A DNA stretch of 64,000 nt from Convolutriloba macropyga. Its lineage: Eukaryota. Position 1 is the stretch's first letter. Each line of letters starts with the position of its first letter. Below, piece by piece: positions 1 to 14,723 of the stretch. The translations under genes and the position numbers were made by a program. Where the stretch lies: assembly GCF_964194025.1 (NCBI RefSeq), contig NC_134474.1, forward strand, positions 34,410,001 through 34,474,000. The letters are read 5' to 3'. Under the pieces are notes generated by a model. The model made no database searches. It was not told where the DNA came from and saw only the letters and a program-made list of their open reading frames with translations.

Positions 1-472
1 CAAAAAAGACCCTTGAGATATAGTTACTTTGGCACGATATGCCTGGGTTACCCTTTGCCCACAACAGTTAAAACTTTCGTGAGATTTGCTTCACAAATGC
101 TACCGTGAAAAAGTCATCCATTCCCTAATTATTGAAATACATCTCATAATCAACATTATGACTTGGTGTTTCTTAAAGTTAGTTTTTTAGCACTTGCGTC
201 CTGGTACAAATGGAAATGAAAACTATCGTATCTTGATTCAATCTGCTTAAAGAGATGCTCTGACTCTTGAAAAGACCAGAGCATGTTTTATCCTTTTAAT
301 GTTAGGCTGTCCTCACTTGGCCAAAGATAGCTATTGTCGAAGCGAACTGCTCGCCAGATGTTTCCCAGCGTTAGTTGGTTTTGTTCTTAGGCATCTGTCG
401 TTTAAGGGACCCTTTGAATTTTGAGTAAAGTGACGGCGTAGCAATATTTTTCTTTCAGAGTTGGCTTAAATA

Positions 473-806
473 ATGCCTCCAAAGAAGAGTGGTGGTGCAG
501 CTAAAACGAAAGTTGCATCAGGTCGCAAACAAGCCCCTATTACCAATGTCAGTACAGCGGCAGACACGTCGAGTGAATATAGCGATGATGATGGCGACTA
601 TACAGTGATTCAACGGCCGGATTCATTTTTTCCTACTCTTCCGAGGTCACAGGGGTTAGGTGATTTGTTGAGAGAAGCCATGATGCCTGTTAACACTGAA
701 GAAGACCAACAACCTGGAACATCAAGTAACCGGGGCCAAAGAGTAGTAGCTGCGTCATCGGGAACTCAAACTCAAACATCAGGCCTTGGAAGACAGAAAT
801 CTTCAG
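473..806 (+). CDS. First coding exon of a low-complexity K/S/G/T/Q-rich protein (MPPKKSGGAAKTKVASGRKQAP...QKSS); candidate N-terminal tail exon of the H3 variant at 10379
   Basis: ATG at 473 follows a polypyrimidine acceptor (tttttctttcag, AG 457-458). A consensus donor CAG|GTCAGT lies at 806/807 in phase 1. The ORF-track extension to 844 runs into intron. Confidence 0.6.
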
Positions 807-3354
807 GTCAGTATAAACCTATTCGTCCCGCAGTTGTCTTTTGATGATCCAGTTTTGATTTGTGGTATATTTAAAGAGGAATTCCGATCAAATGTACAAC
901 GCTCTTTTTTATTTCAGACCAGACGACAATCGCATACATGTTCTTTCACTGTGGATGGTCATTAAATATTGCTATCTTCTTTTTTATTCCCGTAATAATA
1001 TACCCACAGGTATCCATTTTCACTAAAACGAATGATAAGTATTAAGAAAAAATTATACAAACAATTGAGGGTCGCTGCCCATTCTGCAATAACAAGACGG
1101 TTTGTGCGAGTCTGTCCGTGGAGCAGAATGTTCCAACATAGCTCTCAAGGTTGTAAAAACAACTTTTAAATTCTGTCAGAGGAATTGTTTTGAGTATCGC
1201 TTGTTTTGTACCCTTGTTTGTTCCCTTCTTTTGTACCCTAGAAATTGTTTTGTACCCTGCTTTTTGAATTATCTGGATGATCTTCTTAGCAGTTATACAA
1301 CTATAAAACGATCGAACAGGAATAATTTACCATGGTTCTATTCGTCCCACACTATTCATGCTTTGAATAAATGCAACAACGTTGTTTGAAATCTTTCTAA
1401 ATTTCCTTCTGCGTTTGTTCAAGAACTTGGCAGAGATGTAGACGTGTCTGTAGCGTCAAGTTGTTTTCGGCTTATTAAGAGACTCAAGAGTGACCTCTTA
1501 CCTACTGAAATGTGATCAGAAAGTACAATGCATCATGGGTACCCGTCCATTGCGAATGCTTTCAATGCAGATTTTATGACGGTCTATCAGCCTGCCGTTG
1601 GTTTTTTCGACGTCTTTTTACAACAGACATTAAATGAGCTATGCTTTACGATGGTCGATATTCAAGCCGGCTTATCTCAAGCTTCCCTCGGTAGAGGTTT
1701 TGACAAAATACCAGGTGACTTTCCTCGGATGGCTACAGATAGTTTAACTTATTATGTCATGAAACTAATTCAAAGTATTTCTGAAACTTCGACATACCCA
1801 AAAATATGGAAAGCAATTATTATACCAACTTTTAAAGTGGGCTCCAAATTCTGTATTCATTTTTACCGTTCAATTAGTAACTTAAGTAAATTGTCCTTAG
1901 TGTTTGAAAGAGTTCTTTTTAATACTCTATATCCTTTCGTTAGAAAGTTAATCTCTCCTCGTCGTTTCGGATTTATGAAAGGACGCTCAACAATAACTCA
2001 ACTTATATTGTATCTTGATGAAATTTACAAAGCTCATGATAAAGCTGATGATGTATTTTGCATATATCTAGACTTCAGGCCAGTATAAACCTATTCGTCC
2101 CGCAGTTGTCATTGATGATCCAGTTTTGATTTGTGTTATTTTTAAAGAGGAATTCCGATCACATGTACAAAGCACTTTTTTATTTCAGACCGGACGACAA
2201 TCGCATACATGTTCTTTCACTGTGAATGGTCATAAAATGTTGCTATTTTCTTTTTATTCCCGTAATATTATACCCACAGGCATCCATTTTTCACTAAGAC
2301 GAATGATAAATATTTAAAAAAAATTATACAAACAATTGAGGGTCGCTGCCCAGTTTGCAATTACAAGACGGTTTGTGCGAGTCTGTGCGTGGAGCAGAAT
2401 GTTCCAACATAGCTCTCAAGGTTGTAAAAACAACTTTTAATTTCTGTCAGTGGAATTGTTTTTTACCCTTCTTGAATTATCTGGATGATCTTCTTAGCAG
2501 TTATACAACTATCAAACGATCGAAAAGGAATAATTTACCATGCTTCTATTCGTCCCACACTATTCATACTTTGAATAAATGTAACAACGTTGTTTGAAAT
2601 CTTTCTAAATTTCCTTCTGCGTTGGTGGAAGAAGTCAGCAGAGATGTAGACGTGTCTATAGAAATTGACACTGCATTTTGTCTTCATCTTGATCAGTTTG
2701 CCTCAAATAATACTGACGCGTCAAGTTGTTTTCGTCTTATTAAAAGACTCACGAGTGAGCTCTTACCTACTGAAATTAGATCAGAAAGTACAATGCATCA
2801 TGGGTACCCGTCCATTGTGAATGCTTTCATTGCAGATTTTATGACAGTCTATCAGCCTGCCGTTGGTTTTTTAGACGAATTTTTACAAGGGACATTAAAT
2901 GAGCTATGCTTTACGATGTTCGATGTTCAAGCCGCCTTATATCAAGCTTCCCTCGGTGAAGGTTTTGACAAATTACCAGGTGACTTTCCTCGGGTGGCTA
3001 CAGATAGTTTAACTTATTATGTTATGAAACTAATATGAAACTAATTCAAACTATTGCTGAAACTTCGACATACCCAAAAATATGGAAAGCAATTATTATA
3101 CCAACTTTTAAAACGGGCTCAAAATTCTGTATTCAGTCTTACCGTTCAATTAGTAACTTAAGTAAATTGTCCTTAGTGTTTGAAAGAGTTCTTTTTAATA
3201 CTCTATATCCTTTCGTTAGAAAGTTAATCTCTCCTCGTCGTTTCGGATTTATGAAAGGACGCTCAACAATAACTCAAATTATATTGAATCTTGATGAAAT
3301 TTACAAAGCTCATGATAAAGATGATGATGTATTTTGCATACATGTAGATTTCAG
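801..3354 (+). repeat. Tandem duplication, first unit 1272 bp (801-2072; second copy from 2073), covering the intron start plus part of the LINE
   Basis: cttcagg(t/c)cagtataaacctattcgtcccgcagttgtc starts at both 801 and 2073. ORFs 1102/2355 and 1528/2622+3035 are near-identical translations. Confidence 0.92.
1090..2072 (+). mobile_element. Truncated copy of CR1/L2-like LINE ORF2 (linker plus N-terminal RT); start approximate
   Basis: WKAIIIPTFK, YRSISNLSKLSLVFERV, FGFMKGRSTITQL and IYLDF are non-LTR RT motifs. The copy ends at the duplication junction. Confidence 0.85.
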
Positions 3355-4390
3355 CAAAGCGTTCGATTGTGTCCAACACTCATACTTTTGAACAAATTGG
3401 AAAGCTTTGTAGTTGGTTGAAATTTATTACGGTTGTTAGCTTCTTATTTAACGAACAGAGAACAGTGTGTCAAAGCTGAAAATTGTTTAACCTCATGAGC
3501 CTCCATTTCAAGCGGAGTTCCACTGGGTTTGATTTTGGGAATATTGCTTTTTCTAGTATTCATTAATGACCTACCGTCCGGTGGTGTGCCAAGTTTGTAT
3601 CTCTTTGCTGACGACGGCAAAGCATTGAATAATGATTTGCATACTTTACAAAACAACGTGCAGTCATATTTGAATTGGGCCACGAAAAATTCAATGCTGT
3701 TTAATGTTTCCAAAACTCCATTTTTGTGGTTGGAAAGACTAAGGGATACTGCTCTTTAAATATTGGGGGTGAAGTAGTTCATCCCGTGAAAACAGTCAAA
3801 GATTTAGGTATTTATCTTTCGGGAAACTTTAAATGGAACGTCCATATATTGAGAAAGACTTGGCTTATGTTTCTCTTCTGACATCGCTCAAAAGAAATCT
3901 ACATCTTGACTTACCTCTTCAAACGAAGTTAACAGTGTACAGATCATTCCTTTAGTCAACTCTCCTTTACGGATCTGAGATATGGTCTCTCTCCTGTGCT
4001 GAACTATTGAAATTAGATGGTTTTCAAACTAAAAGTACTAAGAGGATTTGCTCATCAAGCTCGTATCGAGACAGACTTTTTAAATGTAAATTACTACCGA
4101 TTTGCTGCTTGCTGCAGTTCAGAGATTTTACAATGCTGAACCGAATCTTGACGCGAAAATATGATTTATGTGCTATGCAACTCACCCAAATTCAATACAA
4201 TCAACTCTTGCGAAGCTCGTCCAAACCACTTTTGATTTTGAATAAACAAAGAAATCCATATCTGAAAAGAAATTTCTGTTTAGAGCTGGGAGACTGGGAA
4301 ATTTAGTTCAAACGTCTACGAGTCTCAATATTTTTATGGATTCCTGTCTTTTTAAAAGTTAACTTAAAACTCTTTAACTTGCTTTCGTTA
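2350..4390 (+). mobile_element. 5'-truncated, degraded CR1/L2-group non-LTR retrotransposon ORF2 (reverse transcriptase pseudogene); boundaries approximate
   Basis: Motifs FGFMKGRST, DFSKAFDCV, SGVPLGLILGILLFLVFINDLP (consensus SGVPQGSILGPLLF..INDL), LFADD, VKDLGI and LLYGSEIW. Stops and frameshifts are present, including an 11-bp microduplication atgaaactaat x2 at about 3024-3045. Confidence 0.9.
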
Positions 4391-5008
4391 ATGAAAAATT
4401 TGATAATACTCATTTTTTGTGTGCATTCTGATTTCCTTTGATCTGTAATGCCTCATGAAGCCATTAAGTCTTTTACTGCTACTACTAGTACTATCCAAAA
4501 ATAACATATGCAATGGAGACAAATACTGTTTGAACCAAAAAATCCGACAAAAACGAAATTCTTCAATAACTTCTAGTTCTTCAACAAATTCCCGTTCTTC
4601 AGCCAAATCTAGAAACATTTTTTAATTTTGTTTTTGGTCAATACTTAAGTTTCGTCACTGTTCGATTAGGTCTTCTTTTCTTATAAAAAAACTAGGCGTG
4701 GAATTTTTAAGGCAATTGTGTTGATAAATGTAAATTTGGAATTAAACTTGAAAATGTAACCTGAAAACGAGAATTTTCAATTTTGATACTTGATGAGCAT
4801 AATGGGACCATAAATTTTTTTAAAAAAAAATCTGGCAGATGTGAACTATTTTAGACTATTTTTATCTTTCATTCCGTCGCTACTATATGTGCATGATTGA
4901 GTTATCAGTAGTAATAGCGTATTTTGCGGCTTTTACTAGCAATGAATATCCATGAGCTTTAATATTGTCCAAACTCAAAGTGTTTATAAATATCTCCTTT
5001 TGTCAAAT

Positions 5009-5359
5009 AATGGAAATTAAAATTATCGTAGCTTGGTTCAGAGCATATTTTGCAGAGCATATTTTATTCTTTTAATGTTAAGCTGTCCTCACTTGGCCAA
5101 AGATAGCTATTGTAGAAGCGAACTGCTCGCCAGACGTTTCCGAGCGTTAGTTGGTTTTGTTCTTAGGCATCTGTCGTTTAAGGGACCCTTTGAATTTTGA
5201 GTTAAGTGACGGCTTAGCAATAATTTTTTTCAGAGTTGGACTTGAACAATGCCTTCCAAGAAGAAGAGTGGTGGTGCAGCTAAAGAAAAAGTTGCATCAG
5301 GTCGCAAGCAAGCCCCTATTACCTTTCAGCAAACAAACCCCTATTACGGATTTTCATAG
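5009..5359 (+). pseudogene. Partial duplicate of region ~209-544 (upstream sequence, acceptor and start of the MPPKK exon), reading MPSKKKSGGAAKEKVASGRKQAPIT then diverging to a stop at 5359
   Basis: Long near-identity, e.g. gctgtcctcacttggccaaagatagctattgt and gttggttttgttcttaggcatctgtcgtttaagggaccctttgaattttgag. ATG at 5249; homology stops at gcccctattacc (~5323). Confidence 0.8.
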
Positions 5360-5954
5360 TAAGCTTTCAGCTTACTATGAAAATCCGGGTATCTTGGGTG
5401 TCCGTTCTATTGACTCAGCGTCATTTTTTTGACGGATGTTTTCACGTCTTTTTTGTCATGTTTGAAGTTAGGGGAGCCATTCTCAATTGTCATTGAATTA
5501 GGTATCATTGATTTTTTAGTGAAGCTTTTGGTTTTAAGTAGCACAAGCTTATCGTCTCTTTCAATGACTCAGCATTAGCTTGCTGAGTAAGTCATCTGTC
5601 TTTTTGAAAATATAATATATTGTTTCATATATGACCATATCAAGATTTGAGTTTGAACCCAAGCAATTCAACTCTGTCGAAAAAATGCTATTATACAGCT
5701 AATTGACTATATTGAATCAGCTCAGCAAAATTGAAATGCGAAACGTTGTACCATTTATCTTGATCACGGAAAAAACTATAGTTTTCAAGGCTTTGCCTAG
5801 TGAACTGAATCTGTGCAATAGGACAACGGCTTCACTTCTAGTGGAGCTATCTTTTTGGCAGTTAGTAAGTTGCAAAATTAAAAAGCTTATCATAGTCTAT
5901 GGAAACCGTACTCAACGGTGTAGCCTCGGGTTGCGTACTCAAACCTCCTTTTAA

Positions 5955-8900
5955 TTTTTAATAGCCGACTCAGCTTAGCTGGCTATTATAGCGCTCCTAA
6001 TTTTTTTTCAATTCAAAGAATTTGAATTGTATTGGTGCGCTGTCTTTTTTTTAAAGATCTTCACGCTTTTTTCGGCTTTTTCACGGCAGTGAGAAGTTAA
6101 ATTAGAGTTGTGATTTTGGTCACACTGAAATAGGAAAGGGAGCGAAGAATCGAGTAGGTTTGGTGCGTGACTTTTTTCAAAACAGCTTTAAAGTGGAGTG
6201 AGAAATTGGTGTTTGAACAATTTGGCGGTTATTGAGATGGATTTTTTTTCAGGTGCGTCAATTTGACTTCTGTTTTCAGAGTTTCCTCTCCTTTAGTGCT
6301 TTTAAGACGGTACATATGTGTTCTAATTGTGCCTATTTGCCTTTGCTTGAATTCATTAAGGGGAAGCTAAAAATTTTTATGACTTTGGCACTATTTGTTA
6401 TAAAATATTAGTGAATTTCAGATTTTCCCCCTTTTTTTAAAATTATCTGTTGTCTTATCACTTAGTGTCATCAATGATAAGTCTGATTGGGTGCTAATGA
6501 GGAGTAAAAGAACCTAATTAATGGTCGAGTCAATAGCTAGTGGTTTTCATGACTTTTACATTACTTTTTCTCAAAAATTTTGAGTGAATTTTTGATTAAG
6601 AATTTATTGTACTTTTTGATGTCTTATCATTTACTCTCCTTGGAGACAAGTCGCTGATGCTGCTAATAGGAGTGAAATTTGTCAATTTAATTGTTTTTGT
6701 TCAAGGCTAGTGCTTTCTATGACTTGACGCTAATTGTTTTTAATAATAATTATAAATTTTTTTGAGTTTTTCTTTTCAACTGTGTCGTCTTAGCTCTTAG
6801 TCTCGTTATTGACAGGTCTCATTGGTTGCTAAAAAGGCTTTAATTAAAGCAAGTCATTTCAGTTAGTAGCTATTGCTTTTTGTGACTTGTTCGTTCATAA
6901 AAAAATCATGTTATTTTTTTTGTTTTGCTAATGTTTGTTGTAGTTATTGCTGTCTGATCACTTAATTTCATTGATAACATGTCTCAACAGTGGTCATTGA
7001 GGAATCAAATAATTGATGTAATTGTATCCTTCAGTAGCTGTTGTGACTTTTATAGTGTGTTTGTAGTGTTTTCAAAAAATTACAGCGAGTTTTATTGCAA
7101 TTTTTAGTTGTTTTTATCTTATTATTTTATATTATTAGTGAGAGGACTCATCGACATTTAATGACAGGTTGCTAATGAAAAATAGAGAATTTTAGTCGGC
7201 ACTTTGAGTTCTCCGCAGTTGTTTTTTGATGCTGATCCTGTCTTCTCGAAAAATAAGTTGAATTTTTAGTCTTGCTTGTTTTTGGTGTTCTTGTGTTGTT
7301 TTTTGCTTAGTCTCATTACTAACAGCTCTCTTTTGCCTTTTAAAGCGGAGTGAGTGATTTTCAGATCATAAATTAATAAATTTCTTTGAATTTTTTTCAG
7401 GACTTGTCCTGCTTTTTTTTGAAGATGTGTTCACACATTTTTCAACGACTTTGATCCTTGAAAACGGGATGGACAGGTGAAGCCCTGTGGGCTTTTAGGT
7501 TTATTAAAGGCCCAAATTGGGCTATAGTAGTCCTTCAAGTTCTTACAGTGGTGCAGCTGCTGGGATGGCCTTAATTTAATGTTAAAAAGTCATTTTTTGG
7601 AGTTTTTGGGCTCATTTTTTTTATCTTTTGAGTTTTTTGTTTGATTAGTCTTGTTTGAAGTTTTTAATAGTCGATGAAGACCTTTTGCGAGACAACATAA
7701 CTTGTCATGACGATTTTATGATCTTTGTTGTGGTGCTACAAACACTCAAAATTTTTGTCATTTTTTGTGTTTTTCCAGCTTGAGGGGCCGGGGAATCTTT
7801 CAAGTTTGATAATAGGGCACTGCATAGAGTACTGGTTTTTAGCATTTTATTGTTTCGAATTTTAGTATTTTTTGGATAAAATCTGCCTTTTTTTAAGGTT
7901 TTCTAAAGTTTTTGTGAATTTTGGTATTTTTCCATTCTCAAGTGGCAGAAAACCTATTCCACGGTGTGATAGAAGTTACTGCATTGTTGTTAGTTTCAAT
8001 GGGTTTTTTTAACAATTTAACTTTTCGACTTTTGGGTTACTGGATAGCGTCTAGACAGAAATGATTCTGAAGATAATAATATCACAATTTTCAGCAACAG
8101 TTCATTAAAATTTGCAATTGATTTCATTTTTAATTTTCCGGTCATTTTCGAGTTAATCGATCTTTAAGGGCCGGTGAATTTTTTCAGGTCTTGCAGTTTT
8201 AATACTGGACCGATTTCAGAAACAAAAATTGAATTTGAACATATTTTTGAAATAGGTATATTTTAAGGGATCAAATTTTGCCTTCGGGGTAATAGCTTCA
8301 AGAGTTTTAGCAATGAGTATATTACTGTTTGATTGTTTCAGTTTCTTCTCAAAATTTCAATAATCTCAAAGTTTTTTTTTGAGATGATTTTGTTTGTTTT
8401 GGCTGGCCTTGTTCAATTTATTTGCTAATCAGATAGAGTACTTCTGAGTTTTTCATTCAATTTTTCGAATCGTATTTTAGGACTTGTAATGCTGTTTTTT
8501 TTTACTTCGTCGAATTAAAATTGTTCGCTTTACCTCATTTTGCCGCCTTGAGATTTTGCGTGAAATCTTTTTGACTTCTCTTGGCTAGTTTCACTCTTCT
8601 CTCATTCTGCTAAAAGTTATTTTAGACAGCAGTTGCTCAGCAAAGCAATTCAAAATGAGCAGAGTCAGTATCAAAAAAACGAAATCAGAAATAGAAACGG
8701 GATAAAGCCCGATCTTAGATGCCCGTAACTTTGTTCTTAGTTACCACTCCTAATGTTTATTGGTATTGATACTAGCCCCTGTGTGGTCTCACCACGGAAC
8801 AGGAGCATGTTCAGCTCCAAAATGACATCTCTATAGTTCGCACTTTAAAATTGTTTATACAAAATCATTTTTTCACTAATTTTTTCTTCTTTCAATCACA

Positions 8901-8957
8901 ATCTTGGTTATGGGAATCAACGGCGGCTATTTTCCGGCAATCTGCCGGGTATGTTTT
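5955..8957 (+). mobile_element. Non-autonomous Helentron-type element (HINE/DINE-1-like), family A, copy 1
   Basis: 5' subterminal aatagccg (5960) with a nearby inverted partner ggctatt (5981). 3' subTIR ggcggctatt (8922-8931) is followed by hairpin ccggca-atc-tgccgg (8934-8948) and T-rich sequence. Both ends are homologous to 16828-17773. Confidence 0.75.
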
Positions 8958-9558
8958 GAAATTGATCTTCCCAGGATCTTTCTTGATGTTTGCCGAATAC
9001 TTCAAATTCCTTTTTTTAGTTGAATTCCCTGATTAACAGAAGGATTGTGCGCCTTGTCTTATATTTCGCTTTTTCTTAAAAATTGTACGTCAAAGATGAT
9101 CTACATCTTGAATCGTTAAACTACTGAATGACTTGGGAGCCATATTCGGCCCCGAATTAACTAAAGCTGATTGGTCATATTGCTGAAAAGTTTACCGAAG
9201 AATGTAGATGCTTAGGTAAGCTTAACATCAGAATTAGTTGGAACTCAATTCTTGCAAACTTGACATGTATAGATTTTTGTTATTTACCAGTTTCACAGAA
9301 AATTAAACTGAAAATTTGAACTTCTGATTTAATTTGGATTTCTCTAGCTGTCTGGAAAGTTGCTGAAAATAGGCTTTTAGTTAATTTAACGTAAGGCCTG
9401 GTGTTACTATATCTAAAGACACCGTTTTAAAACAGCAGAGTCCTGTCTTATTTTCTTTGAATTTCCTTTTCAAAAAGTTAAGGTTGTTTCTGAGCGAAGT
9501 TTGAAGCAATTATAAACGTGTTGGTCTTCTTTTATCCGAAATTTTTGCCTGACTTTTC

Positions 9559-9724
9559 GGATCTATTCTGCCCCCCCCCCAGTGCTTTTATAACCCCCAG
9601 TTACAAATTATATGTGATTATATAGCACGTTACTATGTAAGAAAATAGCACGTGTGCCTGGGGGTCATAAAAAATTTATGCTCACTAAGCTGGGGGGGGG
9701 GGGGGGGCGAAACAGAATAGATCC
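9559..9724. mobile_element. MITE, Merlin-like
   Basis: TIR ggatctattctg...cagaatagatcc with a perfect 8-bp TSD gacttttc (9551-9558 and 9725-9732). GG...CC termini with an 8-bp TSD fit Merlin. Confidence 0.85.
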
Positions 9725-10188
9725 GACTTTTCTAGTGACTTTTACGTCCTCGACTTTTTCGTTTTGCGTAATCTAAATTTCTCTCTCATTGACAAGTGTC
9801 AGCAGATGAACTCAGGTGGCGGCAGTTCACTATCAAAAGTAAAATGAAAATAGAAATGAAATTGGTGTAATTTTTTACCTTAATTTTTTTAGTGGTTATA
9901 GTGTTATACAATAACCTCTAATGACGTCATTTGAAGCCCCTTGGTGAGTTTAGTTACTGCCCCCCCAGCGACTGAAGCTGGCTGCAATAGCTTTGAGCTC
10001 CCACTAGTCATTCGAGAGCATTTCTACGTAGTTGGTCGTTTGTTTATATTTTGACAATTTAATCACCTCAGTCATTCTCCTTGTCCGGATTTTGACAGCG
10101 ATCAAAGAATTTTATTGCTCGGCGACTTAATTGGAGTCCTAGATGCTAGCGGGTTTTTTTGGCCGAAGATGTTCTGAAGATTTTTAGC

Positions 10189-10204
10189 ATGACTTACCCG
10201 AAAG
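10189..10204 (+). CDS. Alternative short first coding exon for the H3 variant (MTYPK-G)
   Basis: ATG act tac ccg aaa g|gtaaca is a phase-1 donor compatible with the acceptor at 10378 (174-bp intron). It could be chance. Confidence 0.35.
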
Positions 10205-10378
10205 GTAACATGTGAGGTTAACATTTTGGCTAAACTCAAAATTGGTTCCTGTCAACGGCCGGTCTGCACACCCCATTACCGCTGTTATCATTAATTTACC
10301 GGCAACGTTATCGTTTGATAAGACATGTTTTGTTATGACTGACTGAGCTGATTCTTGATTAGATTTTCTTTTTTTAAG

Positions 10379-11031
10379 GTGACTCAAACAGTAGTCAATC
10401 CGAAGCAAACGTCGGTTCGAAATCAAAAGTGGCACAGCCTAAGAATAAAGAATTACCAAAGAAAGGAGCATCGCAAAAGAAAGGAGCATCAGATGTTCCA
10501 AATGTTGCTCCCGCTTCGCAGTCGACTAGTGACAAACAGTTGTCATCTCGTCCACAACATTTTGTGACAACGCTGTCTCCAATTTTGCCGGTTTCATCAA
10601 CAGTTTCTGGGGCGCATGTATCAAGAAGAGGATCTGGACGCGCTCGAGGAAGCTCCAAACCTTCTGTGAAAGCTACCAAATCTGCCTCGAGACCAACTCA
10701 TAGACGAAAAAATCGATATCTTAAAGAGATTCAAGAACTGCAAAGAACAACAAATCTCTTAATTCCCAAATTGGCCTTTCAACGCCTGGCTCGTGAAATT
10801 ACTGAGCAGATGTCGGATCGATTAGAGCCGTATCGTTTCACAGGAAAGGCAATGTTGGTTTTGCAAGAGGCGGTTGAATATCAAGTGTGCGAGTATTTCC
10901 AGGCTCTCATGTTTTTAGTGTACCACTGCGGAAGAAAGACCATTTTATCCAGAGATTTTGTCTCACTTGCTTGTGTATTAGATACACTTGGCATTAATCT
11001 ACCAATGTACAGGAGCAACAATCACATTTAG
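10379..11031 (+). CDS. Terminal exon of a divergent histone H3 variant (CenH3/CENP-A-like): basic Ser-rich tail plus complete H3 fold
   Basis: YLKEIQELQRTTNLLIPKLAFQRLAREI...RFTGKAMLVLQEAVE...HCGRKTILSRDF aligns to H3 [28 protein letters not shown]...RFQSSAVMALQEASE...HAKRVTIMPKDI, with loop 1 three residues longer. The ORF-track start is GTG. An in-frame TAA at 10375 and acceptor ttttctttttttaag (AG 10377-10378) show it is a phase-1 spliced exon. Confidence 0.85.
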
Positions 11032-11105
11032 CAACAATCGCGGTACTATACAGACCTACCGCAATAGTAGATACAATATTTTGCAGGAACTGTGTTGATA
11101 AACTA

Positions 11106-11111
11106 AATAAA
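11106..11111 (+). terminator. Candidate AATAAA polyadenylation signal of the H3 variant
   Basis: AATAAA lies 75 nt after the stop. No canonical histone 3' stem-loop was seen. Confidence 0.35.
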
Positions 11112-12481
11112 CTTGTTTTTCCATAATTAGAGCAACAATGTTCAATATTGAAAATTTCGCTGACAACGCTGGTGTAACGGCGACCAGCATTGTCCAGATT
11201 ACTATTGCTACCACTCATCCATTTATTTCACAATTGGAATATCTAAAACTGCTCAAACGGACAACTGCTTTCCTTTCCACCAAGTGGAACAAATCGTGAT
11301 GCAGCTTTTTAAGACATGCAAGATCTTGATTCTCTTGATCAAACTTGAAAGACTTTAACAAGAGCATTTCAGTTCAACATATTATGATGAATCTTGATAT
11401 ACCTTCGTTTGGTCTTGTTCGTAAAATAATTTTTTATTCAAGAACATGCAAATATCTTGCAAGTTTGTACATATGTTGACGTTTGCTCACCAAGAAAGTT
11501 ATCAAGATATCATCTAGATATTTCAAGTTGCATTTCATTGGCCACTATTAGCTTCGAGTTATGAGATCTTTGTTAAAGTTAATCTGTTTCCTCTAACAAC
11601 TGCCCGCTATTTGAATTGTAGGAGCGATTTCAAACTTTAATCATAGCAAACCACTGCGGTTGCAAAAATACCCTATAGTTTGTTAATCTAACGTTGTTAA
11701 AATAAATATCGTCCGCGGCAGTGAAGCAATCAGTTCCTAGAAATCAGATCGATTTGATTTGTTAGGTTATGTAAACGTTTTAGAAAATTGTTTACTGATT
11801 ATCACAAAAATTAATTCTACCCAAATTATGAGGAGCCAATCTTCATGATAATTGATTCGAATTTGTTTGATTAGTGAATTTCTGATTTGTAACATTTGAG
11901 TGGTGCCTTGAATATTAGCCAAATGGAAATCAGCCGAATAAAATGTCAATTCTATAGAATATCAACAAATGTCTCTAAAAAGCTTTTTTCAGACAAATAT
12001 CAGAAATGCTATCTAAATTTTTTAAGCAAAAAGTTGCACTCTAAGTTTTGACAAAAAAAATCCAAAAAGTTGGATTTTTCAAGTTGACGCAAAGCATTTT
12101 GTTCGTTTTATGTTTAAGATTAATTAAGATAACCACGGCCAATATTCCGGAAACCCATTTGAGTATTGTTGTTTGAGTTACTTAAAAATATTTTTGATGT
12201 GTTGTCATTATTTTGTTCACATTTTACGCGAGAATTTAAATTCTGCTATTTTGTTTCCTCATATTAATTCAATCATAGATCTATGCAAGTTAAACAGAAC
12301 CTAGGTCGTCTCAGAAGGCGATTTTACGAATAGAATTGAAGCAATCAAATAATGAAAATGGTTGTCTCGCACTAAGTATTCAAAATAATAAAAGTGAACT
12401 GAACCCCGCTTTGGAGAGGCAGAAGACCAGTCCGGTGCCTCAGAATTTTTACAAATGGTGCGTCGGTGGTCGCAGATCAAG

Positions 12482-12485
12482 GTGT

Positions 12486-12521
<36 letters not shown>

Positions 12522-12966
12522 GTGTGTCTGTGTTTTTGGAGTNNNNNNNNNNNNNNNNNNNNNNNNNNNNNNNNNNNNNNNNNNNNNNNNNNNNNNNNNN
12601 NNNNNNNNNNNNNNNNNNNNNNNNNNNNNNNNNNNNNNNNNNNNNNNNNNNNNNNNNNNNNNNNNNNNNNNNNNNNNCACGCGCGCGTATGTGTGTGTGT
12701 GTGTGTGGGGGGGGGGGTGGTATGTCTGTGCGGGCACGCGCGTGTGTTTGCGTGCGTGTGTGTGGTGGCGGGTGTTGGGTAGGGGTGTGGTGTGTATGTG
12801 AGCACGAGCGCGTTTGGGTGTGTGAGCCTATCTGTGTGTGTGTCTGTGTTCGTGTGTTTGTGCGCTTTCATGTGTGTTTCTGTGTGTATGCTTGTTTGTG
12901 TGTGGTGTGTGTATGTGTGTGGTGTGATTGTCTGTGTGTTGCGTGTGTGTGTGGTATGTGTGTGTT

Positions 12967-13007
<41 letters not shown>

Positions 13008-14723
13008 CGCGCGTGGGTGAGTGTGTAAGGGTGTGTGTTAGTGTATGGGTGTGGTTAAGTGTGTGTGTGTATGTGTGTGGATTGGCTTGGGTGGTGTGTG
13101 TTTATGTTTTGTGTGTATGCGTTGTGGTCTTTGTTTTTATGTGGTGTGTTTTCGTGTTTGTGGTGTGGTGTGTTGTGTTTGTGTGTGGGTGTGTGTGTAG
13201 GGGGGGGGGGGGGTCGTGTATGTGCGTGCGTGGTGTGTTTGCGCGTGGTCACGCGAGCGCGCGCGCGTGTGTGTGTGTGTGGGAGCGTGCGCGTGTGTGT
13301 GAGCGTCTCTGTGTGTGTGTGTGTGTGTGCGGGCACGCGCGTGTGTTTGCGTGCGTGTGTGGTTGAGGGGGGTTTGGGTTTTGGATAGGGGTGTGGTGTG
13401 TGTATATGTGAGCACGAGCGAGTTTGGGTGTGCCTGTATCTGCGTGTGTGTGTGTGTCAGTGTGTGTGTGTGAGCGTGCGCTGGCATGTTTTTCTGTGTG
13501 TGTTTTATGTGTTTGTGTGTGTGTGTTTTTGTGCGTGGTGTGGTGTGTGTTTGTATGTGTGTGTGTGTGTGTCTGTGTGTGGGGGGGGGGGGGGGGTTGG
13601 CGCGTGCGTGTGCGCGCGCGTGTGTATGTGGATGCGTGTGTGTTGGAGAGCGTGTGTGTTTGGTCTGTGGGTGTGGGGGGGGGGGGGGTGGGTTGGTGTG
13701 GTGTGATGTGTGCGGGAACGCGCGTGTGTTTGCGTGCGTGTGGTGGGGCTTTGGTTAGGGGTGTGCTTGTGTTTATGTGAGCACGAGCGCGTTTGGGTTT
13801 GTGCGCGTGTTTGTGTGCGTGTGCCTGTAAGTGTGTTCGTCTGTGTGTGCGTGCGTGTGTTTAGGTGTGGTTGTGTGTGTCTGCGTGTGTGTGCTATGTG
13901 TTTGGTGTATGTTTGTATTGTGTTTTGTGTGTGTGTTTGCGTGTGTGGTCGCTTGCGTGGGTGTGGTTAGCTGTGTGTGTGGTCTGTATGTTGTTTGTGT
14001 GTTTGTGTCTGTGGGTGTGGTGTGTGTATGGTTTGTTTGTGTTTTTGCGTGTGTATGGTTTTGTGTATGTGTTTGCAAGTCGGTGGTGTTTGTTTGTGTG
14101 TGTTTTTGTTTGTGTGTGTGCGCGCGTCTGTGGTGTGTCTGGTTGTGTATGGGGTATGTGTGTGTGAGGGTGTGCGTGGGTGAGTGTGTAAGGGTGTGTG
14201 TAGGCGTGTGTGTTTGTGTTTGTGTGTAGTTGGGTGTGAGAGGTTAAGTGTGTGTTTGTGTGTGTGTGTGTCGATGGACTTGTGTGTGGTGTGGTGTGTT
14301 TGTGGTGGCTGTGTATGTGTTGTTTTGTTTTCGCGTACGTTTGTTTATGCGTTTATTGCGTTTGCGAGTTTGTGGTGTGGTTTGTTTGCGTGTTACGCGC
14401 GCGCGTGTGTGGGAGCGGGTGCGTGTGTGTGAGCGTCTTATGTGTGTGTGTGCGGGCACGCGCGTGTGTTTGCGTGCGTGTGTGGTGGGGGGGGGGGGTT
14501 TGAGTTTTGGATAGGGGTGTGGTGCGTGTGTTTGTGAGCACGAGCGCGTTTGGGTGTGTGCGCGTGTTTGTGTGCGTGTGTGCCTGTATGTGTGTCTGTG
14601 TGTGTGTGTGCGTGCGTGTTTAAGTGTGGTTGTGTGTGTCTGCGTGTGTGTGCTATGTGTTTGGTATGTTTGTGTTGTGTTTTGTGTGTGTTTCCGTTTG
14701 GTCGCGTGCGTGGGTGGTTAGCT

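What the first reader, a model, noticed from the sequence alone, without database searches (positions are those of the whole stretch)
473..11031. A histone H3 variant that may carry a ~225-residue N-terminal tail, assembled across a 9.6-kb transposon-filled intron
Seen: the H3-fold exon has no ATG before its tail, has an in-frame stop at 10375, and starts at a phase-1 acceptor (10379). The MPPKKSGGAAKTK... exon ends at a consensus phase-1 donor (CAG|GTCAGT, 806/807). Joining them gives 334+653=987 nt, an uninterrupted 328-aa protein (...QKSS-G-DSNSSQSEANVGSKSK...), and both sides share S/G/K/Q/T-rich composition, with an acidic patch (SEYSDDDGD) in the first exon. Known: CenH3 tails are long and fast-evolving, while canonical H3 tails are about 40 aa. 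Inference: this is one gene encoding an unusually long-tailed H3 variant. The rival model uses a 16-nt exon at 10189 (MTYPKG).
Basis: partly seen in the sequence, partly recalled or inferred. Interest (0 to 1): 0.8.

Follow-up and report, generated by a model that had tools for sequence, protein, structure and literature searches.

The report
Long-tailed centromere-type histone H3 of an acoel
The two distant exons really are spliced into one mRNA for a 328-residue, very divergent histone H3 variant of the acoel worm Convolutriloba macropyga; it is most likely the worm's centromeric histone and has an unusually long tail of about 220 residues, but the gene model already exists, unnamed, in RefSeq.

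Summary
Exon 473-806 and exon 10379-11031 have the stated donor, acceptor, phase and upstream stop. Joined, they give 987 nt and 328 aa.

The join is real. A transcript contig in run X5 passes from 806 directly to 10379, base-exact. X5 has no coverage over the rival 16-nt exon. The product is identical to RefSeq XP_075249597.1, an "uncharacterized protein" of Convolutriloba macropyga, so the model is not new.

New here:
- The mRNA 5' end leaves the genome at an AG acceptor (458|459) and carries the end of the acoel spliced leader. The gene is therefore probably SL trans-spliced.
- The intron holds LINE reverse-transcriptase fragments, high-copy repeats, a 1.27-kb tandem duplication that copies the exon end and donor, and a decoy copy of the gene's 5' end.

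The protein is probably the CenH3/CENP-A orthologue. It is 40% identical to the worm's own H3, loop 1 is 3 residues longer, and its best solved matches are CENP-A. It keeps two H3 residues (Q68, F84) that CenH3s are said to lack, and localisation is untested.

Its tail of about 220 aa exceeds the 189 aa called "unusually long" in C. elegans. Interest is modest.

The parts
457..458 (+). AG acceptor where the mRNA contig leaves the genome; probable spliced-leader trans-splice site (exon starts at 459)
   Evidence: the loose end of X5 record 25 reads ...TAAATAG then AGTTGGCTTAAATAATGCC. Bases from 457 on match the genome, and upstream it has TAAAT where the genome has CTTTC. The SL of a related acoel ends ...TTATTAAATAG, and the same SL exon followed by GT is present in this genome.
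459..806 (+). Exon 1: 14-nt 5' UTR, ATG at 473, codons 1-111 plus the first base of codon 112 (tail part 1: basic N-terminus, acidic SEYSDDDGD patch, short predicted helix at residues 62-69)
   Evidence: (X5 holds 97% of the sampled words of 440-806)
807..10378 (+). 9,572-nt GT..AG intron, phase 1, filled with repeats
801..3334 (+). Local tandem duplication (unit about 1,272 nt; copies 801-2072 and 2073-3334+). It includes the last 6 nt of exon 1 and the donor; in the second copy the donor is GC (CAG|GCCAGT at 2078/2079).
   Evidence: families D1, D2, D4-D6, D8, D9; bases 801-1090 occur nowhere else in the genome except this local copy, so the real donor is not transposon-derived.
1528..3391 (+). 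LINE-type reverse-transcriptase ORF fragments (1528-2088, 3035-3391) belonging to a dispersed repeat
   Evidence: RVT_1 at 5.1e-9 and 0.002; more than 25 dispersed copies of window 1248-1500
5053..5323 (+). Decoy partial copy of the gene's 5' end (upstream region, AG acceptor, ATG at 5250, first ~25 codons), 89-94% identical, ending in a short dead ORF
   Evidence: D3, D7. One search shows no contig of its own in X5; only the true exon's contig is laid there, with 4 mismatches.
10189..10204 (+). Rival 16-nt first exon (MTYPK-G); not supported
   Evidence: sequence present. X5 depth is 0 at 10000-10199 and there is no 10204>10379 joint.
10379..11031 (+). Coding part of exon 2: rest of the tail (residues 112-~219), the histone fold and a non-H3 C-terminal tail; stop TAG at 11029-11031
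10654..10959 (+). H3-type histone fold (residues 204-305), with loop 1 three residues longer than in H3
   Evidence: PF00125, 2.2e-17; 40% identity to own H3, 3-residue insertion; best PDB matches are CENP-A
11032..11937 (+). 3' UTR, inferred: the contig runs 738 nt past 11199, which is about 11937 if collinear; AATAAA lies at 11937-11942
   Evidence: record length 1932, record 1194 = 11199; sequence.

Best explanation
This is one expressed gene of the acoel Convolutriloba macropyga (chromosome piece C7, 34.41 Mb). Its pre-mRNA probably receives the acoel spliced leader at the AG acceptor 458|459. Exon 1 (459-806) is cis-spliced across a 9.57-kb repeat-filled phase-1 intron to exon 2 (10379 to about 11.94 kb). 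The 328-aa product has a disordered, Ser/Gly/Lys/Thr-rich N-terminal tail of about 220 residues followed by a strongly diverged H3-type histone fold. The most likely function is the centromeric histone (CenH3/CENP-A): it would replace H3 in centromeric nucleosomes, and the diverged loop 1/alpha-2 region and the long tail would serve as handles for loading and kinetochore factors. Shown here: the gene structure, its expression and the H3-variant fold. Inferred: SL trans-splicing (strong circumstantial evidence), centromeric function, and any role of the tail.
For: Gene structure:
- X5 contig record 25 joins 806 to 10379 to the base.
- The identical 328-aa protein is XP_075249597.1.
- Both exons are single-copy in the 1.18-Gb assembly, so a processed retrocopy cannot explain the contig.
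- X5 has no depth over unique intron parts, where the DNA runs X1-X3 have about 30-40.

Spliced leader:
- The contig departs from the genome at an AG and carries ...TAAATAG, the end of the published acoel SL.
- The genome holds 1,314 exact AAACTTATTAAATAGGT against 6 controls, in arrays of about 1.25-kb period. One copy reads GCCTAATTGTTGTGATAAACTTATTAAATAG|GT.
- No TAAATAGGT lies in the 1.5 kb upstream.

CenH3 reading:
- Pfam Histone at 2e-17.
- The seven best PDB sequences are all human CENP-A (55-58 bits), against 47-50 bits for H3.
- Only 40% identity to the worm's own H3, with a 3-residue loop-1 insertion.
- The tail is not alignable to the H3 tail.
- The closest database protein is a 134-aa thrips H3 variant that itself carries the CenH3 substitutions.
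- Every other H3-like locus found in the genome is closer to H3 or H3.3.
Against: - The fold keeps H3 Gln68 (AFQRL) and Phe84 (YRF). Both are listed as absent from CenH3s in the criteria quoted by PMC4359364.
- No localisation or functional data exist.
- Six-frame searches found no CENP-C cupin, SANTA or Scm3 domain in the genome. These searches are insensitive in an intron-rich genome.
- A second divergent H3 variant with loop 1 two residues longer exists at C3:37.85 Mb, though its best matches are H3.3.
- The expression evidence is one assembled contig from one run. Contigs cannot show minor isoforms.
- Only 5-7 non-genomic letters of the SL were visible.
Confidence: 0.72

Rival explanations
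1. Same gene structure, but the protein is a lineage-specific non-centromeric H3 variant (for example a germline or sperm chromatin histone, or a variant with a regulatory tail). The true CenH3 would be another locus or would have been lost.
For: The fold retains H3 Q68 and F84, against the diagnostic list in PMC4359364. A second variant with an extended loop 1 exists at C3:37.85 Mb. No CENP-C, Scm3 or SANTA signal was found.
Against: The best solved matches are CENP-A, about 8-10 bits above H3. Loop 1 is 3 residues longer and identity to H3 is 40%, both typical of CenH3. The C3 variant matches H3.3 best and no N-terminal exon was found for it. The negative domain searches are weak evidence.
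Confidence: 0.22
2. The main product is the 222-aa protein that starts in the 16-nt exon at 10189-10204 (MTYPKG...). Exon 473-806 would belong to another transcript.
For: The mini-exon has an ATG, a good donor (AAG|GTAACA) and the right phase.
Against: X5 has zero depth at 10000-10199 and no 10204>10379 joint, and the contig covering the H3 exon carries exon 1. RefSeq models the 328-aa form. A minor or stage-specific isoform cannot be excluded from contigs.
Confidence: 0.03
3. The joined contig is an assembly chimera or comes from a processed retrocopy, and the two exons are unrelated.
For: Only one contig from one run shows the join.
Against: The join falls exactly on a GT..AG pair and keeps the frame. 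Both exons are single-copy in the assembly. The independent RefSeq model is identical.
Confidence: 0.02

Closest known systems
Human CENP-A (e.g. PDB 3nqu, 3an2, 6c0w)
   Same: Best solved-structure sequence match (1e-14, about 58 bits). The alphaN-alpha1 motifs are shared (RR..LKEI..LQ..T.LLI.KL.F.RLAREI), loop 1 is longer than in H3, and T107 of H3 is replaced.
   Different: The tail is about 220 aa against 39 aa (PMC8351560). Q68 and F84 of H3 are kept. The C-terminal tail is different (…LGINLPMYRSNNHI). Loop 1 is one residue longer than in CENP-A (alignment).
C. elegans CENP-A (HCP-3)
   Same: [quoted passage not shown] That tail binds KNL-2 and replaces the missing HJURP/Scm3 route (PMC8351560). 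It is a functional analogy for what a long tail can do.
   Different: No sequence similarity of the tails was found. The acoel tail is longer (about 220 aa) and is predicted almost wholly disordered, with one short helix, in a low-confidence single-sequence model. Whether the acoel lacks HJURP is unknown.
Frankliniella occidentalis LOC113213387 (P0001), a 134-aa H3 variant
   Same: Closest protein in the 5.8-billion-protein collection (44% identity over the fold; shares LQRTTNLLIPK and LQEAVE).
   Different: It has a short tail, and it is closer to canonical H3 (47%) than to the acoel protein (42%). It lacks Q68, F84 and T107, whereas the acoel protein keeps Q68 and F84.
RefSeq XP_075249597.1, uncharacterized protein LOC142342224 [Convolutriloba macropyga]
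   Same: Identical 328-aa sequence.
   Different: It carries no functional name. SL trans-splicing and the CenH3 reading are not part of the name given to it.

Membership tests
CenH3 / CENP-A | H3-type histone fold | tested here: met
   PF00125 at 2.2e-17, residues 204-305; aligned to H3 and CENP-A from alphaN to alpha3
CenH3 / CENP-A | Loop 1 longer than in canonical H3 | tested here: met
   3-residue insertion (SDRLEPYRF against KTDL---RF) relative to the worm's own H3
CenH3 / CENP-A | N-terminal tail highly divergent and not alignable to the H3 tail | tested here: met
   BLASTP aligns only the fold. Local alignment of the whole tail to the H3 tail scores no better than shuffles (36% of shuffles reach it). 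The first 40 residues alone score p about 0.04, which is not convincing.
CenH3 / CENP-A | Absence of the H3 glutamine in alpha1 (Q68/69) | tested here: not met
   AFQRL aligns with PFQRL; criterion as quoted in PMC4359364
CenH3 / CENP-A | Absence of the H3 phenylalanine after loop 1 (F84/85) | tested here: not met
   YRF aligns with LRF
CenH3 / CENP-A | Absence of the H3 threonine in alpha2 (EDTNL; the paper's numbering is ambiguous) | tested here: met
   FQALMF aligns with FEDTNL, so T becomes L. The T of RVTIM is kept, as it is in human CENP-A (alignment).
CenH3 / CENP-A | Closer to known CenH3s than to H3 in sequence searches | tested here: met
   The top 7 PDB sequences are CENP-A (55-58 bits), with H3 at 47-50 bits. 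The margin is modest.
CenH3 / CENP-A | It is the genome's only such divergent H3 variant | tested here: inconclusive
   The other loci are canonical H3, an 83%-identical variant, H3.3-like exons and pseudogenes. One H3.3-derived variant at C3:37.85 Mb has loop 1 two residues longer.
CenH3 / CENP-A | Localises to centromeres and is needed for kinetochore assembly | not testable with these tools
   Needs cytology, ChIP or knock-down
SL trans-spliced acoel mRNA | SL RNA genes with the leader exon followed by a GT donor are present in the genome | tested here: met
   1,314 exact matches against 6 controls, in tandem arrays. L010 reads GCCTAATTGTTGTGATAAACTTATTAAATAG|GT, identical to the S. roscoffensis leader.
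SL trans-spliced acoel mRNA | The mRNA 5' end carries the leader, joined at a genomic AG acceptor | tested here: inconclusive
   The contig departs from the genome at cAG|AG (458|459) and shows ...TAAATAG. Only 5-7 non-genomic letters were printed; 25 are present in the contig.

The most novel reading that the evidence does not exclude
The ~220-residue tail is a functional loading or kinetochore-docking module. As in C. elegans, where the long CENP-A tail binds KNL-2 in place of HJURP/Scm3, it would give acoels an independently evolved, tail-dependent route of centromere specification. The retention of H3-like Q68 and F84 would then mark an unusual CenH3 lineage in Xenacoelomorpha, an early-branching bilaterian phylum on some phylogenies.
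Probability: 0.12. Interest if true: 0.55.

Novelty: new member of a known kind. Interest (0 to 1): 0.3.

Why it matters
I found no paper on centromeric histones in acoels or other Xenacoelomorpha: the search for acoel plus CENP-A gave only incidental hits. A chromosome-level assembly of this species now exists (PMC13650328). A credible CenH3 candidate makes its 15 centromeres mappable by ChIP or CUT&Tag. The tail of about 220 aa is longer than the 189 aa described as "unusually long" in C. elegans, so it adds a test case for what long CenH3 tails do. In practical terms, the case shows that a 9.6-kb repeat-filled intron with decoy copies of the exon end and of the gene's 5' end is spliced correctly. 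It also shows that the gene has no cis 5' exon to look for, because it is probably trans-spliced. The gene model itself is already public, so the gain is annotation, not discovery.

Tried and rejected
- Homologues of exon 1: an exhaustive phmmer search of 1.84 billion representatives found only the protein itself and a low-complexity chance hit (P0004). There is no Pfam family for the tail.
- Word-indexed search with exon 2: only two distant H3 variants were found. No acoel orthologue came up, so conservation of the tail could not be tested.
- The idea that the N-terminus (KKSGGAAK..GRKQAP) and the pre-fold KATKSAS are remnants of the H3 K9 and K27 motifs: the first 40 residues score p about 0.04, residues 181-224 p about 0.9 and the whole tail p about 0.36 against shuffles. 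Not supported.
- Single-sequence AlphaFold: mean pLDDT 46.7. It is useful only for saying that the tail has no confident fold apart from a short helix at 62-69. No fold search was made on it.
- ESM Atlas features: generic histone clusters below 0.9, not discriminating.
- An upstream cis 5' exon ending TAAATAG|GT: absent in the 1.5 kb upstream. Replaced by the SL explanation.
- The idea that the donor at 806/807 is the edge of a transposon: rejected. Bases 801-1090 are unique apart from the local tandem copy.
- Six-frame Pfam searches of the genome: CENP-C cupin, SANTA and Scm3 gave nothing, and Yippee/Mis18 gave one hit that may be an ordinary Yippee protein. All are uninformative in an intron-rich genome.
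- The look-up of encoding contigs for the RefSeq protein: nothing on record.
The 260 contig letters between the two laid pieces are inferred from exact length agreement and from X5 holding 97% of the exon-1 words.
Full report
**Observation**

The window is G000:C7:34410001-34474000 of a 1.176-Gb assembly. That is the published size of the Convolutriloba macropyga genome (PMC13650328), and an exact protein match names that species.

Every sequence fact in the finding holds:
- ATG lies at 473, and exon 1 ends at G806 before GTCAGT.
- The acceptor AG lies at 10377-10378, with an in-frame TAA at 10375-10377.
- There is no in-frame ATG in exon 2 before the histone fold.
- The stop lies at 11029-11031.
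- A script joined 473-806 to 10379-11031. This gave 987 nt, whose translation equals protein P0005.

**Is the join real?**

Runs X1-X3 are DNA: their contigs are collinear with the genome at about 30x. X5 (79 Mb of contigs) behaves as a transcriptome. It has no depth over unique intron stretches and a 1,932-nt contig at depth 182 over the H3 exon.

That contig (record 25) gives three pieces of evidence:
- Record positions 49-111 were laid on 5261-5323 with 4 mismatches. This stretch is the 94% intronic copy of exon-1 bases 482-544, which differs at exactly 4 positions (family D7).
- Positions 372-1194 lie on 10377-11199 with no mismatch.
- Counting from record 49 = base 482 gives record 373 = base 806. 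Counting from record 372 = base 10377 gives record 374 = base 10379. The two letters AG are common to both sides. So the contig passes from 806 to 10379 without a letter gained or lost.

X5 also holds 97% of the sampled words of 440-806. It has zero depth at 10000-10199 and no 10204>10379 joint, so the 16-nt-exon rival is unsupported. Both exons are single-copy in the assembly, which excludes a processed retrocopy as the source.

Independently, the exhaustive protein search with exon 1 led to a cluster whose 328-aa member is XP_075249597.1, [quoted passage not shown]. The gene model is therefore already public but unnamed.

**The 5' end**

The contig's first letters do not match the genome upstream of base 457. 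It reads ...TAAATAG/AGTTGGC, whereas the genome has ...TTTCTTTCAG/AGTTGGC, that is, an AG acceptor at 457-458. No TAAATAGGT lies in the 1.5 kb upstream.

The published spliced leader of the acoel Symsagittifera roscoffensis is GCCTAATTGTTGTGATAAACTTATTAAATAGA, and 30% of that worm's genes are trans-spliced (PMC9911081). This genome holds 1,314 exact copies of AAACTTATTAAATAGGT against 6 for the control, many in arrays of about 1.25-kb period on C9. One copy reads GCCTAATTGTTGTGATAAACTTATTAAATAG|GTTCG.

I conclude, with about 80% confidence, that the mRNA is SL trans-spliced at 459, leaving 14 nt of gene-encoded 5' UTR. Only 5-7 non-genomic letters were printed, so this is inference and not proof.

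**The intron**

The intron (807-10378) contains:
- a local tandem duplication of about 1,272 nt (801-2072 and 2073-3334+). It copies the last 6 nt of exon 1 and the donor, and the copy's donor is GC;
- LINE reverse-transcriptase fragments belonging to a dispersed family;
- a decoy copy of the upstream region, the acceptor, the ATG and about 25 codons at 5053-5323;
- very high-copy short repeats at 5.8-6.4, 8.4-9.0 and 9.6-9.8 kb.

Bases 801-1090 are unique apart from the local copy, so the real donor is not transposon-derived.

**What the protein is**

The fold evidence points to a CenH3-type variant:
- Residues 204-305 are a core-histone fold (PF00125, 2e-17).
- Against the worm's own canonical H3 (L002:1432-1839), the fold is 40% identical, with a 3-residue insertion in loop 1.
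- Against all solved structures, the seven best sequences are human CENP-A (55-58 bits), ahead of H3 (47-50 bits).
- The nearest protein in 5.8 billion is a short thrips H3 variant that has the classical CenH3 substitutions.

The criteria used in the field are an extended loop 1, a divergent tail, and loss of a Gln, a Phe and a Thr of H3 (PMC4359364). They are only partly met. Loop 1, the tail and the alpha-2 Thr fit, but Gln68 and Phe84 are retained.

I checked the other H3-like loci in the genome:
- canonical H3 arrays on C12;
- a full-length variant, 83% identical to H3, on C5;
- H3.3-like exons and pseudogenes;
- one two-exon, H3.3-derived variant at C3:37.85 Mb, with loop 1 two residues longer, for which I found no N-terminal exon. 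Its exons match H3.3 and H3 best, not CENP-A.

So the C7 gene is the best CenH3 candidate. I put that at about 0.7.

**The tail**

About 220 residues precede alphaN. Of the first 224, 17% are Ser, and there are 35 Lys+Arg against 17 Asp+Glu. The tail has an acidic patch at 26-50 and a KKGAS doublet. It has no Pfam family, no homologue in 1.84 billion representatives (for exon 1), and no significant likeness to the H3 tail. A single-sequence AlphaFold model is of low confidence (pLDDT 46.7) and shows only a short helix at 62-69 before the fold.

[quoted passage not shown] In C. elegans it binds KNL-2 in a lineage that lacks HJURP/Scm3 (PMC8351560). Whether the acoel tail does something similar is open. 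My six-frame searches for Scm3, SANTA and the CENP-C cupin found nothing, but they are too insensitive to count.

**Verdict**

The CenH3 reading is probable. What I add is the species, the RNA proof, the probable trans-splicing and the intron's anatomy. Because RefSeq already holds the model and long, fast-evolving CenH3 tails are a known phenomenon, this is a new member of a known kind and of modest interest.

Noticed in passing
window 457-459; L010:1486-1518; G000:C9:23.13-23.73 Mb: The genome carries large arrays (about 1.25-kb period) of SL RNA genes. Their leader exon is letter-for-letter the one published for Symsagittifera roscoffensis. There are 1,314 exact hits of the 17-mer spanning the leader end plus GT, against 6 controls.
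   Followed up: partly
window 5053-5323: A decoy copy of the gene's upstream region, AG acceptor, ATG and first ~25 codons sits inside its own intron (89-94% identity). It would encode a dead 36-aa ORF. No contig of its own was seen in the RNA run.
   Followed up: partly
window 801-3334: A tandem duplication of about 1.27 kb starts 6 nt before the end of exon 1. A second copy of the exon end and donor therefore lies at 2073-2084, with GT changed to GC.
   Followed up: yes
window 5365 (loose end in DNA run X3): Some DNA contigs that match the window from 5365 onward are preceded by ...ACAGCAAACTTATTAAATAG, a variant of the spliced leader. Copies of this repeat elsewhere in the genome seem to begin with leader sequence, perhaps as retroposed trans-spliced RNAs.
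   Followed up: no
L022:2380-2980 (-) = G000:C3:37852979-37853579: A two-exon H3.3-derived variant (alphaN APRRQWALQEIRRYQ) with the intron in loop 1, loop 1 two residues longer than H3, Phe84 changed to Tyr, and the C-terminus ...RIRGDIYDLMT. The first exon starts at an acceptor with no ATG, and no N-terminal exon was found. It may be a second divergent variant or a decaying copy.
   Followed up: partly
L020:277-687 = G000:C5:67543276-67543686: An intact 137-aa H3 variant, 83% identical to canonical H3, with ARKS changed to ARKT and ARKM, an altered K27-K36 segment, and the C-terminus RIRGHQ.
   Followed up: partly
window 12450-13400: A long G/T-rich (TG)n-like microsatellite tract with a run of N lies downstream of the gene's 3' UTR. 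The composition skew is extreme (GC skew 0.67).
   Followed up: no
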